A stretch of DNA of 64,000 nt, from positions 124,001 to 188,000 of IMG/VR virus record IMGVR_UViG_3300027747_002221, one strand, 5' to 3'. The notes below the pieces were generated by a model. It was not told the origin of the DNA. It made no database searches and saw only the letters and a program-made list of their open reading frames with translations. Shown here in pieces: positions 4,580 through 9,009 of this stretch (position 1 is its first letter; each line of letters begins with the position of its first letter). A program made the position numbers and the translations under genes.

Positions 4580-5230
4580 ATGCCATCAGCTTTAGAAAAT
4601 TTTATTTCTCAGATACGTACTTCCGGTGTTGCGCGCCCTAATAGATTTTCTGTTGAAATCTATGCACCACCCTGTATGACCAACTCAAAATTAGATGGAG
4701 TAAGTGCAATACCGCAATTAATTAATTTATATTGTCAGACTGCATCTTTTCCTGGCCAAAATATTGGCGTGAAAGATTTAAGAATAACTGGTCCAACATA
4801 TAAAAGACCAGTTAATATAGATTACGGTGGAGAGGGAATTACCCTTACTTTTTTAGTAGATGGTAAATTTAATGTAAAATCTTTTTTTGATGTATGGATG
4901 CACAAAATAATAGATCCATTTCAATTTCATGCAAATTACGATCATGAAGATACTTCATATACCACAAGTATAGTAATTAATCAAATTAATGAAGTGAAAT
5001 TCCCTGTTGCTAGAGGGACGAGAATCCTTGAGACGACTCTTGAGACACAACCTTATCGGATTGTACTCGAAAATGCTTTTCCTAGAAATATAGGAATGAT
5101 GGAATTGGATCAAAGTTCTCAAAGCACTGCTCATAAAATGAGTGTAACATTTGCTTATAGAAAATTAATTCAGGGAAGTCCAATAACTAAATCTGTAGAA
5201 TATAGTCCAATTGAACCGAATCTACAATAA
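4580..5230 (+). CDS. gp54: Baseplate tail-tube initiator gp54 (gp19-fold)
   Basis: GVARPNRFSVEI...LYCQTASFPG...ITLTFLVD...FFDVWM...AFPRNIG...VTFAYR. Confidence 0.75.
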   Translation: MPSALENFISQIRTSGVARPNRFSVEIYAPPCMTNSKLDGVSAIPQLINLYCQTASFPGQNIGVKDLRITGPTYKRPVNIDYGGEGITLTFLVDGKFNVKSFFDVWMHKIIDPFQFHANYDHEDTSYTTSIVINQINEVKFPVARGTRILETTLETQPYRIVLENAFPRNIGMMELDQSSQSTAHKMSVTFAYRKLIQGSPITKSVEYSPIEPNLQ

Positions 5231-5245
5231 CAAACAAGGAATATT

Positions 5246-5938
5246 ATGTCTTTACCAAAATTACAAACACCTACATATGAATTGATTTTACCTTCTACTG
5301 GGGATAAAATAAAATTTAGACCCTTTCTTGTAAAAGAATATAAAATACTATTAACAACTTTAGATTCGGAAAATGAAGAAATAAATCGAGTGGTTACGGA
5401 ATTGGTTGATGCCTGTACATTCAACAAATTAAAAATAGACGCACTTGCAAATTTTGATATCGAATATATCTTTTTAAATATAAGAGCAAAATCGATAGGA
5501 GAGATTACTAATCTCTTATTAAATTGTAATAATTGTGATAATCAAATATCGTTTGATTTAAATTTAACAAAAGCCGAAGTCGAAAAATCTCCAGAACACA
5601 GTTCAAAAATTAATTTAACTGATAAAATTATTATTGAAATGAGATATCCTAAATTTGATGAAATGATTGATATCTATCAAAATTTTAAATCTGACAGGAT
5701 AGTCGAATTATTAAGTAAATGTATAAAAGCCGTATACACCGAAGATACTGTATATGAAGAGTATACTAAAGAAGAGCTATTGGAATTTGTAAACTCTTTC
5801 TCAAAAAATCAGTTTGAGATGATAGAAAACTTCTTTTTAACTATGCCGAAATTGGTTCAGAATATAGAACAGGATTGTAACGAATGCGGCGCACATAATG
5901 AATTAAAACTTGAGGGTTTGCAGAATTTTTTCGTCTGA
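5246..5938 (+). CDS. gp26: Baseplate hub assembly protein gp26
   Basis: MSLPKLQTPTYELILPSTGDKIKFRPFLVKE...FDIEYIFLNIRAKSIGE; two CxxC motifs; ends EGLQNFFV. Confidence 0.92.
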   Translation: MSLPKLQTPTYELILPSTGDKIKFRPFLVKEYKILLTTLDSENEEINRVVTELVDACTFNKLKIDALANFDIEYIFLNIRAKSIGEITNLLLNCNNCDNQISFDLNLTKAEVEKSPEHSSKINLTDKIIIEMRYPKFDEMIDIYQNFKSDRIVELLSKCIKAVYTEDTVYEEYTKEELLEFVNSFSKNQFEMIENFFLTMPKLVQNIEQDCNECGAHNELKLEGLQNFFV

Positions 5939-6129
5939 CCCTTTCCCATGAGGGGTTGTTAAATTATTTTACGCTAAATTCTACTATGATAACCAAATAT
6001 AATTATTCTCTTACAGAAATAGAAGATATGATACCATGGGAAAGAGACACTTATATATCATTAATTATTACACAAATCAACGAAGAAAACGAAAAGATAA
6101 AACAAAGAAATTTCAGGGATAATCTATAA
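5932..6129 (+). CDS. gp51: gp51-like baseplate hub assembly module (ATG at 5986, or reached by -1 frameshift from gp26)
   Basis: Manual translation: RLTLSHEGLLNYFTLNSTMITKYNYSLTEIEDMIPWERDTYISLI...; YSLTEIE.MIPWERD motif; not in the ORF track. Confidence 0.85.
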   Translation, partial: RLTLSHEGLLNYFTLNSTMITKYNYSLTEIEDMIPWERDTYISLIITQINEENEKIKQRNFRDNL

Positions 6130-8036
6130 TGCTACCAACAAATCCACAATCTATGTCTACTGCCGACAAATCTATTTTAGAAAATTTGAGAGAGCAAGGC
6201 GCACAAATAGATAGACAAACTAGAGTAATGGAAAAACTTGTTGACAGAATTGCAAGGATGATGACTGCTGAAGAAAGAGTGGAAAAGAAAACTAAAAAGA
6301 AAGATAATAGAATTGAAGGTGATACTAAAATAAAAGATGTGCCCGGTTTACTTATAGATAATCTAGCAGATAAAATAGAGGATTCTATTACTAAACAATT
6401 TCTTAAAATTAAGGATAGTTTTAAAAAAGAAAAACAAGAACCTATAGATAGATCGCAGGAACCTGCGTTAACGGAAAAAGAAAAAGAAAAAAAACCAAAA
6501 GATGAAACTGATACTTTAAGAACCATACTAAATAGTATGGTTAGTAATTCTAAATATCAGGAACAGATGACGGAAAATTCTAAAGCATTACAATCTATTG
6601 CAGACAAAACTCTTACTAATGTAGACAATCTAAATGATAATTTAAAAAATATAGAACAACCTGAAGCAAATACTACTGAAAAAGAAAATAAAACTGAAGA
6701 AAAAAATAATAAAAAAGAAGGCAAATTAAATAACAATCAGAAATTAGCTATTGCCATAGGCGCTTCTATAGCTGCGGCATTAAAACCTCAATTTGATACG
6801 TTAGGTAAAACTTTGAAAGAAGCGTTGGAACAGGGTTTTGCAAATTTAGCGTCTTCTATAGATAATATGAGCGGCATGAGTGGCCCTGGAGTAGATATTC
6901 CCCTGGGAGGACCAGACGGCAAGGATGACAAGGGTGGCAAGGGTGGCAAGGGTGGCAAGGGTGGCAAGCTACCAAACCTTATGGATAAGCCAGGGCTCTC
7001 CAGACTCTTCCGGGACCCCCGCACTGCATTAGCTACTGCTGTGGTAGGATCAATAGTTGCAGCCGACCAGTCTAAACCTGAAACAGATGCGTACTTTGAA
7101 GAACAAAGGAAGAAAAAAGAAGCGGAAGAAGCAGCAGCTAAAGCAAGCAGATCTGCCGAGGGCAAAGTGACACAGCGCAAGGAAATTGGCGCGCCCACAA
7201 ATACACTTACACCCAAACAAATTAACGAGCTTAATGAAAAAATTAAAGATGGCACAAATACAAATATAGATAAAGATGGTAAAGTAGTTAGACAAGCGGC
7301 GCCTGCTCCAGTAATTAGCCTAGATAAGATAACCCCGGTCGCGTCCGAAAAAAAGCTAAAAGCTGAAGTTAAGAAAGACGACACGCCAGCTATTGTGGGA
7401 GATTTAAACAGGGTACTCGATATTGACGCCCCAACAAAGCGGCATCCGCTTGCTAACAAACTTGACCAAACAGCTGCAGAGCTTAATATTAACCAAAATG
7501 AAAGCACTTTTAACGATCAAATGAAAAATGATAGCAGGGCGCAAGCAAAGGCATTATCTGCTAAAAAACGAGAAGAAAATGAAAGACTAAAAGCTGCTGA
7601 GAAGATTGATCCGAAAGCTTTAGAATGGGCGAAAAAACGCTATAAAGATCCAAATTTGAGTGATCCTGGATACCTATCTCAAGAAAAAAATAAATCGATA
7701 TTAGAGTGGCTTCAGCAAGAGAAGAATCAAGATTATATCAAACAAAACCCAAATTATAATTTAGAACCAAAGGTGGCTCCGGAAAAGAAATCTGGGGTCA
7801 ACCAACAGAAAAATGATAAAATGGGAATGCTTAACGAAGTAACCGACACAAAAATGGCATTGGCAGACAGTAAAAAAGAACAGCCAATCATTATTACTAA
7901 TAATAATACTAATACCGGGGGTGGTTCAGATCCTGCTCCTATTGGTTTTGGATCCGCTTCGCCGAGAAATACATCTACAGCAATAAATGATTATTTTAGA
8001 AATAATGGTAGGCTACACGATGCTGCTTACGGATAA
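6129..8036 (+). CDS. gp29-like baseplate hub/tape-measure protein
   Basis: 635 aa, helical and low-complexity, directly after gp26/gp51; call rests mainly on synteny. Confidence 0.5.
   Translation: MLPTNPQSMSTADKSILENLREQGAQIDRQTRVMEKLVDRIARMMTAEERVEKKTKKKDNRIEGDTKIKDVPGLLIDNLADKIEDSITKQFLKIKDSFKKEKQEPIDRSQEPALTEKEKEKKPKDETDTLRTILNSMVSNSKYQEQMTENSKALQSIADKTLTNVDNLNDNLKNIEQPEANTTEKENKTEEKNNKKEGKLNNNQKLAIAIGASIAAALKPQFDTLGKTLKEALEQGFANLASSIDNMSGMSGPGVDIPLGGPDGKDDKGGKGGKGGKGGKLPNLMDKPGLSRLFRDPRTALATAVVGSIVAADQSKPETDAYFEEQRKKKEAEEAAAKASRSAEGKVTQRKEIGAPTNTLTPKQINELNEKIKDGTNTNIDKDGKVVRQAAPAPVISLDKITPVASEKKLKAEVKKDDTPAIVGDLNRVLDIDAPTKRHPLANKLDQTAAELNINQNESTFNDQMKNDSRAQAKALSAKKREENERLKAAEKIDPKALEWAKKRYKDPNLSDPGYLSQEKNKSILEWLQQEKNQDYIKQNPNYNLEPKVAPEKKSGVNQQKNDKMGMLNEVTDTKMALADSKKEQPIIITNNNTNTGGGSDPAPIGFGSASPRNTSTAINDYFRNNGRLHDAAYG
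6930..6968 (+). repeat. In-frame 9-bp tandem repeat (AAGGGTGGC)x4 encoding (KGG)4
   Basis: Four exact copies plus AAG read directly. Confidence 0.95.
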
Positions 8037-8079: not shown

Positions 8080-9009
8080 TTAATCTTCTGCTAATTTTGC
8101 GAAGTAAGATAAAGACTCATCATCATCTTCAAAATCTACTTCTTTAGCAGGCGCCTTAACGGGCGCTTTTTCTGCCTTTGGAGATAGGCTTGGCTTTGGA
8201 GCTGATACTTGTTCGTCAAGATCAATCTCTTCAGCACGCTTACCCGGAACAGCTCCGGCACTTAATCCCATAACCATTTCGAATTTCTTCTTTAATTCGT
8301 CATAGGATTTAAAGTGTTTCTCATCCAAAAACTGTGTCAATGAATGTTGCTTAGACCAGATTTTCTCAATGTCAGCATCATCTTCAGCAATGTTGCTTGT
8401 TGCTTCAAATTCTGACTTATCATAATTACGATAACCTTCAACCTGACGAATCTTCAACTTGAAGTTTGCGCCTTCCCAAAAATCAAACACATTAATAGGT
8501 TTTTCATCTTGGAATTGTGGTTCAGCCATGTCCTTAATCTTATCAAAGATCTTCTTACCAAATTTATAAAGGAATACTTTACCTTCATTCTCTGGATGAG
8601 CAGGATCCTTAACAATAAGGATGTTGGTTGTGTAGCTTAGCTTACGCTTTTGTTTGCGAGCAATTTCTTTATTTGCTTCAGAACCAGAGTTCCATAGTTC
8701 TGTGTTATGTTCAGAAACAGGATCTGCTTTACCTATAGAAGTTAAGGAATTTTCGATGTACCATTTTCCTCCTGGACCTTGGAATCCATGATTCCAAACT
8801 CTAACCCAGGGCAAGTCTTCGCCTTTAGGTGCAGGTAAAAATCGTAAGACAGCATAACCGTTGCCTGCCTTGTCTACTTCTGGAGACCAGAAGCGATCAT
8901 CAGCGCCACGAGATTCTGCTTGGGGGTTTGCGATCTTTTCTACCTCTTTCATGAGGGAGTCAAATCCGCCGCGGGATTTTCTTAGATCAGATAGTGATGT
9001 GAATGCCAT
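8080..9009 (-). CDS. gp32: Single-stranded DNA-binding protein gp32
   Basis: DDRFWSPEVDKAGNGYAVLRFLP...WYIENSLTSIG...FLYKFGKKIFDKI...GANFKLKI; acidic C-tail. Confidence 0.96.
   Translation of the reverse strand: MAFTSLSDLRKSRGGFDSLMKEVEKIANPQAESRGADDRFWSPEVDKAGNGYAVLRFLPAPKGEDLPWVRVWNHGFQGPGGKWYIENSLTSIGKADPVSEHNTELWNSGSEANKEIARKQKRKLSYTTNILIVKDPAHPENEGKVFLYKFGKKIFDKIKDMAEPQFQDEKPINVFDFWEGANFKLKIRQVEGYRNYDKSEFEATSNIAEDDADIEKIWSKQHSLTQFLDEKHFKSYDELKKKFEMVMGLSAGAVPGKRAEEIDLDEQVSAPKPSLSPKAEKAPVKAPAKEVDFEDDDESLSYFAKLAED

What the first reader, a model, noticed from the sequence alone, without database searches (positions are those of the whole stretch)
5910..6129. Predicted programmed -1 frameshift fusing gp26 to the gp51 module, upstream of the tape-measure-like gene
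Seen: gp26 ends CAG AAT TTT TTC GTC TGA, which contains the heptamer T-TTT-TTC (5926-5932). An SD-like GAGGG lies about 10 nt upstream (5912-5916). A hairpin ACCCTT/AGGGGT (5938-5956) starts 5 nt downstream. The -1 frame is open through the heptamer and reads RLTLSHEGLLNYF...YSLTEIEDMIPWERD, but its first ATG (5986) comes after the conserved-looking LSHE..LNY segment. Known: a slippery heptamer with upstream SD and downstream hairpin is the dnaX/IS-type -1 signal, and lambda gpG/gpGT tail chaperones use a -1 shift just upstream of the tape-measure gene. Inference: one locus makes a 230-aa gp26 and a fused product of about 294 aa, extending the G/GT rule to T4-like phages, where I do not recall it being described.
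Basis: partly seen in the sequence, partly recalled or inferred. Interest (0 to 1): 0.8.

Follow-up and report, generated by a model that had tools for sequence, protein, structure and literature searches.

The report
Conserved frameshift in tail chaperone gene
A freshwater T4-like phage almost certainly makes a short and a long version of its tail-assembly chaperone by letting ribosomes slip back one base on a run of six T's, a real and deeply conserved signal that was already reported for T4-like phages in 2022.

Summary
gp26 (5246-5938) ends CAG AAT TTT TTC GTC TGA, with T_TTT_TTC at 5926-5932. The -1 frame is open from there to 6129.

In one sequence the heptamer and the hairpin are no better than chance. 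The comparison is what counts:
- All 70 intact related loci (53 distinct junctions, gp26 identity down to 32%) keep the T6 run in the same register.
- It is the only invariant block at the junction.
- Third-codon-position variability switches from the 0 frame to the -1 frame exactly there.
- No start codon for a separate "gp51" is conserved.
- T4 gp51 is a gp26-like domain (residues 1-201) followed in frame by this module. That is exactly the predicted 294-aa fusion.
- Phages with two separate genes (T4, Aeromonas 25, 44RR2.8t) lack the T run.

An upstream SD-like GAGG is supported by codon bias. The hairpin is not supported.

The biology is not new. Vladimirov, Gautam and Davidson (Virology 2022) identified gp26/gp51 as the tail assembly chaperones of T4-like phages. 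A citing paper says they reported poly-T -1 slip signals. I could not read the primary paper. No protein-level evidence exists here.

The parts
5246..5938 (+). gp26-type ORF (short chaperone form, TAC-N), 230 aa including Val230, stop TGA at 5936-5938
   Evidence: PF12322 T4_baseplate E 2e-60 and phrog_150 E 7e-64. More than 7,700 database homologs; nearly all of the best 120 are also exactly 230 aa. AlphaFold model pLDDT 86, pTM 0.81.
5912..5916 (+). SD-like GAGGG, 9 nt upstream of the heptamer (overlaps the Glu-Gly codons of the conserved LEGL motif)
   Evidence: At this Glu codon GAG is used in 34 of 46 junctions, against 19% GAG among 1,320 Glu codons elsewhere in the same genes. The motif is absent or weak in the most distant clades.
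5926..5932 (+). Slippery heptamer T_TTT_TTC (proposed -1 shift site)
   Evidence: T6 is in the same register in 70 of 70 intact loci, 53 distinct junctions and 16 clusters at 60% aa identity. It is the only invariant block in the 96-nt alignment. Synonymous choices are biased towards the run. The run is absent in two-gene phages.
5937..5957 (+). Hairpin 4-5 nt downstream of the heptamer (8 bp with 3 G-U pairs, 5-nt loop); possible stimulator, not established
   Evidence: -8.7 kcal/mol, z -0.69. 70.6% of cells paired across 51 distinct sequences, only slightly above controls. RNAalifold finds no consensus structure.
5932..6129 (+). -1 frame extension (gp51 C-terminal module, TAC-C), 65 codons plus TAA; with gp26 residues 1-229 it gives a 294-aa product
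   Evidence: phrog_634 'baseplate hub assembly catalyst' E 1e-19 from residue 2, and the C-terminal tail of phrog_150. It aligns to T4 gp51 residues 201-245. tblastn matches in 367 phage records start at residue 1 and overlap the end of gp26. -1 frame codon periodicity starts at the heptamer.
6129..8036 (+). 635-aa ORF directly downstream; probable tape measure protein (inferred)
   Evidence: Position, size close to T4 gp29 (590 aa), and low-complexity content. A protein-language-model lead points to a T4_Tape_measure cluster (score 0.90, lead only). There is no sequence match to T4 gp29, PF25671, the HTVC008M tape measure protein or the PDB.
4580..5230 (+). Upstream neighbour, tail-tube-like protein (context: tail/baseplate module)
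   Evidence: phrog_45 tail tube E 2e-29. The syntenic gene is annotated 'baseplate tail tube initiator' in Mosig and phiM9.

Best explanation
This is the tail-assembly-chaperone locus of a T4-like phage.

Most ribosomes translate gp26 in frame and stop at TGA 5936-5938, giving the 230-aa short form. A minority slip back one base, with tRNA-Phe in the P and A sites on T_TTT_TTC (5926-5932). They continue in the -1 frame from CGT 5932 to TAA 6127-6129. The result is a 294-aa long form: the gp26 domain plus a 65-residue C-terminal module that is homologous to the C-terminus of T4 gp51.

An SD-like GAGG about 9 nt upstream probably promotes the slip. The short and long forms would then act like lambda gpG and gpGT on the tape-measure-like product of the next gene.

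Shown here: the sequence anatomy, its conservation, the coding signature of the -1 frame, and the colinearity with T4 gp51.
Inferred: that the shift is ribosomal, its efficiency, the role of the SD-like motif, the chaperone function, and the tape-measure identity of the downstream gene.
For: 1. T6 followed by C, T or G lies in the same register at the end of gp26 in all 70 intact loci, 53 distinct junctions and 16 clusters at 60% aa identity. These span freshwater and marine contigs, cyanophages, pelagiphages, Vibrio, Sinorhizobium and Pseudomonas phages. The 0-frame stop follows within 2-10 codons, usually after one more codon.
2. Columns T31-T36 are the only invariant block in the gap-free 96-nt alignment.
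3. The most variable codon position switches from 0-frame third positions upstream to -1-frame third positions immediately downstream of the heptamer. The -1 codons directly after the site are therefore translated.
4. The first ATG in the -1 ORF falls at codon 3, 4, 5, 9, 12, 13, 15, 19, 20, 33 or 44, or upstream at -15. In 13 junctions it is only at codon 33, after half of the conserved module. The window's TTG 5956 is lost in a 99%-identical relative and in an RNA contig. Its ATG 5986 is CTG or CTA (Leu) in 87%-identical relatives.
5. Synonymous choices favour the run:
   - first Phe codon TTT 53/53, against 73% elsewhere;
   - second codon TTC 48/53, against 27% elsewhere;
   - preceding codon NNT 53/53 across Asn, Ser, Asp and His, against about 77%.
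   In phiM9 the second codon is TTG (Leu), so the nucleotides are kept rather than the residue.
6. T4 gp51 residues 1-201 match the full gp26 Pfam profile (E 4e-52), and residues 201-245 align to -1 residues 1-45. A natural protein with the predicted fusion architecture therefore exists.
7. Two-gene phages lack the run. T4 gp26 encodes FF as TTC TTT after GAG. Aeromonas 25 and 44RR2.8t gp26 end in LGVK.
8. T4 gp26 and gp51 are listed as hub assembly chaperones, and gp51 is absent from virions (PMC3004832). Prior identification as tail assembly chaperones is reported by citing papers.
Against: - There is no protein, ribosome-profiling or reporter evidence. The fusion product has not been seen for this phage or, in anything I could read, for any relative.
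- The hairpin is weak and not conserved, and the SD-like motif is missing in several distant clades. The stimulators are therefore uncertain.
- Some lineages have an ATG 3-5 codons after the site, sometimes overlapping the stop as TAATG or TGATG: Vibrio D484, phiM9, phiN3, S-PM2, Syn1 and S-WAM1. A separate small product is possible there.
- A homopolymer run could also act through RNA polymerase slippage.
- Counts over related sequences are not independent events.
Confidence: 0.8

Rival explanations
1. Transcriptional slippage. RNA polymerase stutters on the T6 run and adds one U to a fraction of the mRNAs. Standard translation of those mRNAs then yields the same fusion.
For: The conserved element is a homopolymer. 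A few lineages lengthen it to T7 or T8 (L060, L064, phiN3, HTVC008M). [quoted passage not shown] One citing paper reads that as the two-gene solution, but I could not check.
Against: - From general knowledge, bacterial RNA polymerase slips appreciably only on runs of about 8-9 or more.
- The run is held at exactly six in 48 of 53 junctions by a C, although TTT is the preferred Phe codon. That is selection against lengthening, the opposite of what this model predicts.
- The SD-like codon bias upstream makes sense for a ribosomal event only.
- One metatranscriptome contig spans 5892-6082 with no indel. Contigs hide rare variants, so this is weak.
Confidence: 0.1
2. There is no recoding. The module is made as a separate small 'gp51' protein, as databases annotate it, by initiation at a nearby ATG/GTG/TTG or by termination-reinitiation after the gp26 stop.
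For: Public records annotate 43-59-aa gp51 ORFs. In some clades an ATG sits 3-5 codons after the site and overlaps the gp26 stop (TAATG in Vibrio D484, TGATG in phiM9 and phiN3). That layout is typical of translational coupling.
Against: - The start position is not conserved and is often far inside the conserved module (codon 19-20, 33 or 44).
- In the window, GAGGGG abuts TTG 5956 with no spacing, and that TTG is not conserved.
- -1 frame purifying selection begins at the heptamer, upstream of any start.
- This model does not explain the invariant T6 and its synonymous bias, nor why two-gene phages drop the run.
- T4 gp51 carries the module fused, not free.
Confidence: 0.07
3. The overlap is an assembly or sequencing error at a homopolymer, or a decaying pseudogene of a once-fused gene.
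For: Homopolymers are error-prone. One contig (L049) does carry a 188-nt deletion across the junction.
Against: The same T6 and the same frame relation are seen in 70 independent assemblies, in finished genomes of cultured phages and in contigs of a DNA run. Nearly all of the 120 closest database homologs end at residue 230. Both frames show purifying selection.
Confidence: 0.01

Closest known systems
Tail assembly chaperones of T4-like phages: gp26 (short form) and gp51 (long form), Vladimirov, Gautam & Davidson, Virology 2022 (known to me only through citing papers)
   Same: Same protein family (PF12322) and same C-terminal module. The short and long forms share the N-terminal domain. A poly-T slip signal lies at the end of the short-form gene.
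   Different: T4 and its close relatives encode the two forms as separate, divergently transcribed genes with no T run. The window uses one gene plus a -1 overlap. This phage is an uncultured freshwater relative whose locus is unannotated.
Lambda gpG/gpGT, and the conserved tail-gene frameshift of long-tailed phages (Levin 1993; Xu, Hendrix & Duda 2004; from general knowledge and reference lists)
   Same: A -1 shift a few codons before the stop of the first ORF. The second ORF has no start of its own. Both forms share the N-terminus. The locus sits directly upstream of the presumed tape measure gene.
   Different: Lambda's heptamer is G_GGA_AAG. No sequence similarity was found and fold similarity is insignificant (best PDB chaperone hit HK97 2ob9, E 2.2). 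gp26 is about twice the size of gpG and carries a Cys4 motif.
T7 gene 10A/10B frameshift at G_GUU_UUC (general knowledge; mentioned in PMC12846349)
   Same: A U-rich slip site with tRNA-Phe on UUC in the A site. The Ackermannviridae relative Serratia phage 2050H1 has exactly G_GTT_TTC at its gp26 end.
   Different: It is a capsid gene with a different function. T7 needs distant 3' elements.
E. coli dnaX tau/gamma -1 signal (A_AAA_AAG, SD 10 nt upstream, hairpin downstream)
   Same: An SD-like motif lies about 9-10 nt upstream of the heptamer, and codon bias supports selection for it.
   Different: The downstream hairpin is weak and not conserved. The shifted frame extends the protein instead of terminating it.

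Membership tests
T4 gp26/gp51 baseplate-hub chaperone family (PF12322, phrog_150/634) | N-terminal domain matches the T4_baseplate profile over its full length | tested here: met
   Window gp26 residues 9-229 match profile positions 2-218 of 219, E 2e-60. T4 gp26 and T4 gp51 residues 1-201 match the same profile. The predicted fold matches BFVD 'baseplate hub' models at TM 0.8 or more.
T4 gp26/gp51 baseplate-hub chaperone family (PF12322, phrog_150/634) | C-terminal module homologous to the C-terminus of T4 gp51 | tested here: met
   phrog_634 E 1e-19. BLASTP to T4 gp51 residues 201-245, E 2e-7. Sullivan 2010 noted the same similarity for the short cyanophage gp51.
Frameshift-made tail assembly chaperone pair (lambda G/GT type) | Second ORF overlaps the first in the -1 frame and has no conserved start of its own | tested here: met
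Frameshift-made tail assembly chaperone pair (lambda G/GT type) | Conserved slippery heptamer in X_XXY_YYZ register within the overlap | tested here: met
   T_TTT_TTY (TTG in one case) in 53 of 53 distinct junctions, with synonymous bias.
Frameshift-made tail assembly chaperone pair (lambda G/GT type) | Located immediately upstream of the tape measure gene | tested here: inconclusive
   The next gene (6129-8036, 635 aa) has a fitting size and position and a language-model lead to T4_Tape_measure. HMM, BLAST and PDB searches find nothing. HTVC008M annotates a tape measure two genes downstream.
Frameshift-made tail assembly chaperone pair (lambda G/GT type) | Both products are made, at a fixed low ratio of long to short | not testable with these tools
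   This needs a reporter assay, proteomics or ribosome profiling. RNA contigs only show that the junction carries no indel.
Frameshift-made tail assembly chaperone pair (lambda G/GT type) | Chaperone fold shared with solved tail assembly chaperones | tested here: inconclusive
   A confident model (pLDDT 86) has no significant PDB match. HK97 chaperone 2ob9 appears at E 2.2, probability 0.15, TM 0.21/0.37.
dnaX-type stimulated -1 signal | SD-like element about 10 nt upstream of the heptamer | tested here: met
   GAGGG at 5912-5916. GAG is used in 74% of junctions at this codon against 19% elsewhere. It is not present in every distant clade.
dnaX-type stimulated -1 signal | Stable, conserved downstream hairpin | tested here: inconclusive
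   -8.7 kcal/mol with z -0.69. There is no consensus structure and the covariation is marginal.

The most novel reading that the evidence does not exclude
I could not read the 2022 paper, so I cannot exclude that several results here go beyond it:
- the one-gene-plus-slip layout is the widespread and probably ancestral state, found in Kyanoviridae-like phages, pelagiphages, KVP40-like vibriophages, rhizobiophages, Otagovirus and Ackermannviridae, with T4's two genes a derived duplication;
- an upstream SD-like stimulator is under selection;
- the T run is lost precisely where two genes exist.

The invariant CTTTC block downstream of the site may also be an unrecognised stimulator.
Probability: 0.2. 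Interest if true: 0.45.

Novelty: already known. Interest (0 to 1): 0.27.

Why it matters
This closes the apparent exception of T4-like phages to the rule that long-tailed phages make two chaperone forms from one start. It also explains why "gp51" looks 80% truncated in cyanophages and vibriophages.

The practical value is in annotation. None of the 13 one-gene records inspected marks the slippage. The module is annotated with arbitrary starts (43-59 aa) or not at all, so the long form is missing from protein databases. The T4 lineage offers a natural comparison of frameshifting against gene duplication for setting the ratio of the two forms.

Tried and rejected
- L049 looked like a natural in-frame gp26-module fusion. 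It is a 188-nt deletion variant of L035 with a stop at the break.
- Hairpin covariation across 53 junctions was marginal. RNAalifold gave no consensus.
- The gp26 model has no significant PDB fold match.
- The 635-aa ORF has no match to T4 gp29, PF25671, the HTVC008M tape measure protein or the PDB.
- The homolog search for longer natural fusions returned only near relatives, nearly all of 230 aa, among the 120 listed.
- Read-laying was limited to contigs, so rare RNA insertions at the T run could not be assessed.
- Keyword searches with gp26/gp51/frameshift, 'baseplate hub assembly catalyst' and cyanophage/frameshift found nothing relevant. The prior work surfaced only through the PRFect paper.
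- The primary paper is not held in the library.

Full report
**The sequence**

The window carries a 230-aa ORF at 5246-5938 (+). It is a full-length member of the T4 gp26 family (PF12322, E 2e-60; phrog_150, E 7e-64). Its last codons are CAG AAT TTT TTC GTC TGA, so T_TTT_TTC lies at 5926-5932 in X_XXY_YYZ register.

The -1 frame is open from 5911 to the TAA at 6127-6129. From 5932 it reads RLTLSHEGLLNYF... Its first canonical starts are TTG 5956 and ATG 5986. GAGGG is at 5912-5916. The arms ACCCTT and AGGGGT are at 5938-5943 and 5951-5956. A shift at the heptamer would give 229 + 65 = 294 residues.

**Chance**

Taken alone, the elements are unremarkable in this AT-rich DNA. TTTTTTC occurs 39 times in the window against 28 +/- 5 expected. 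The hairpin folds at -8.7 kcal/mol with z = -0.69. The case rests on comparison with relatives.

**The module**

The 65-residue -1 peptide matches phrog_634 ('baseplate hub assembly catalyst', gp51) at E 1e-19, starting at its residue 2. That is upstream of any start codon. It also matches the C-terminal tail of the gp26 profile phrog_150.

tblastn finds the peptide in 367 phage records. The matches begin at residue 1 and overlap the annotated end of gp26. Sullivan et al. 2010 had noted that cyanophage and vibriophage 'gp51' are only about 20% of the T4 length and resemble its C-terminus. They did not mention a frameshift (PMC3037559).

**Conservation of the junction**

I collected these loci:
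- 63 IMG/VR loci, with gp26 identity from 100% down to 32%;
- ten cultured phages from distant clades: S-WAM1, Mosig, Syn1, DSL-LC03, Vibrio D484, Sinorhizobium phiN3 and phiM9, Pseudomonas Astolliot, HTVC008M and S-PM2.

Results:
- All 70 intact loci have exactly one site where a T6 run in this register ends a long 0-frame ORF, a stop follows within 2-10 codons, and 55-68 -1 codons follow.
- There are 53 distinct junctions in 16 clusters at 60% aa identity.
- In the gap-free 96-nt alignment, the only invariant block is the six T's.
- Per-column entropy shows the variable codon position switching from 0-frame third positions upstream to -1-frame third positions immediately after the heptamer. 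The -1 codons next to the site are therefore under protein-coding constraint.

**No conserved start**

The first ATG of the -1 ORF sits at codon 3, 4, 5, 9, 12, 13, 15, 19, 20, 33 or 44 after the site, or upstream at -15. In 13 junctions, including 87%-identical relatives of the window, it is only at codon 33.
- The window's TTG 5956 is TTA in a 99%-identical contig and in a metatranscriptome contig.
- Its ATG 5986 is CTG or CTA (Leu) in close relatives.

**Nucleotide-level selection**

| Position | At the site | Elsewhere in the same genes |
|---|---|---|
| First Phe codon | TTT 53/53 | 73% TTT |
| Second codon | TTC 48/53 | 27% TTC |
| Preceding codon | NNT 53/53 (Asn, Ser, Asp, His) | about 77% |
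| Glu codon in the upstream SD-like motif | GAG 34/46 | 19% GAG |

In phiM9 the second codon is TTG (Leu), so the T run survives an amino-acid change. These counts are over related sequences, but the pattern holds across the 16 clusters.

**T4 as the key**

In T4, gene 26 is on the minus strand and gene 51 on the plus strand. T4 gp51 residues 1-201 match the whole gp26 Pfam profile (E 4e-52). Residues 201-245 align to residues 1-45 of the window's -1 peptide.

The join is colinear to the residue...DVF-KLLVNPDE... in T4 gp51 against ...NFF-RLTLSHEG... in the window. T4 gp51 is therefore a natural protein with the predicted fusion architecture, and T4 gp26 is the short form.

Where two genes exist, the slip site is gone:
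- T4 gp26 keeps Phe-Phe but spells it TTC TTT after GAG.
- Aeromonas phages 25 and 44RR2.8t end gp26 with LGVK, and their gp51 reads through in frame.

**Stimulators**

The SD-like motif has codon-bias support but is missing in several distant clades.

The hairpin is kept in the window's clade, but it coincides there with the conserved peptide LSHEG. Across all junctions 70.6% of cells pair, only slightly above controls, and RNAalifold returns no consensus.

One oddity remains. CTTTC (5941-5945) is invariant in 41 junctions although CTT is a minor Leu codon. It persists in a subclade that has lost the 3' arm of the hairpin.

**Function**

The T4 tail review lists gp26 and gp51 as hub assembly chaperones and states that gp51 is not in the particle (PMC3004832).

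The next gene (6129-8036, 635 aa) is placed and sized like a tape measure gene. A language-model search gives a lead to a T4_Tape_measure cluster. No HMM, BLAST or PDB search confirms it.

A confident gp26 model (pLDDT 86) matches many 'baseplate hub' models of large myoviruses. It has no significant solved-structure match. The HK97 tail chaperone appears only at E 2.2. The G/GT-like role is an inference from architecture and from the T4 literature.

**Ribosomal or transcriptional**

A metatranscriptome contig spans the junction without an indel, but contigs hide rare variants. Selection holds the run at exactly six with a C, against the codon preference for TTT. That, together with the SD-like bias, favours a ribosomal event. 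This is an inference.

**Prior knowledge**

Direct keyword searches found nothing. [quoted passage not shown]
- The PRFect paper summarises it as follows: some T4-like phages carry one short gene and one longer fused gene instead of frameshifting (PMC10885494).

The primary paper is not held, so I cannot say exactly which clades and signals it covers.

**Verdict**

- The frameshift interpretation is strongly supported by comparison but not shown at the protein level.
- The hairpin is unsupported.
- The tape-measure neighbour is inferred.
- The phenomenon is already described.

What remains useful is annotation. None of the 13 one-gene records inspected marks the slippage. The module is given arbitrary starts or left unannotated, as in S-WAM1, DSL-LC03 and the Ackermannviridae phage 2050H1. 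In 2050H1 it follows G_GTT_TTC in the -1 frame.

Noticed in passing
L077:2421-2660 (Serratia phage 2050H1, Ackermannviridae): The gp26-like gene ends CAG GTT TTC ATC TGA. The gp51-like module (..SMFEISDMMPWHLD..) lies unannotated in the -1 frame right after G_GTT_TTC, a T7 gene-10-type slip site. The same layout therefore extends beyond the T6 clades.
   Followed up: partly
window 5941-5945: CTTTC is invariant in 41 distinct junctions although CTT is only 14% of Leu codons elsewhere in gp26. It persists in the L050-L055 subclade, where the 3' arm of the hairpin is lost, so the hairpin alone does not explain it.
   Followed up: partly
L049:2040-2200: This contig has a 188-nt deletion relative to L035. 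It removes the end of gp26, the slip site and the first half of the module, and leaves a stop. It is either a defective genome or an assembly artefact.
   Followed up: yes
window 5958: G>A turns the only early start candidate (TTG 5956) into TTA. It is seen in a 99%-identical contig (L006) and in a metatranscriptome contig (X20).
   Followed up: yes
window 6880-6993: A Lys-Gly-Gly repeat (KGGKGGKGGKGG) inside the 635-aa ORF attracts short pieces of unrelated contigs when reads are laid, giving a local depth bump and many loose ends.
   Followed up: no
L001, L004, L002, L003, L069-L074 (public phage records): Annotation of 'gp51' is inconsistent. It is absent in S-WAM1 and DSL-LC03. Elsewhere it is 43-59 aa, with starts at non-homologous positions. 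No ribosomal slippage is annotated in any of the 13 one-gene records inspected.
   Followed up: yes
L069:1195-1215, L070:1195-1220, L071:1195-1210: In Vibrio D484, phiN3 and phiM9 an ATG overlaps the gp26 stop (TAATG or TGATG) 3-4 codons after the T run. These lineages might make a free module by coupling as well as the fusion.
   Followed up: no
window 8080-9009 (-): A 309-aa ORF on the minus strand directly after the tape-measure-like gene looks like a T4 gp32-type single-stranded DNA binding protein by eye. It was not tested.
   Followed up: no
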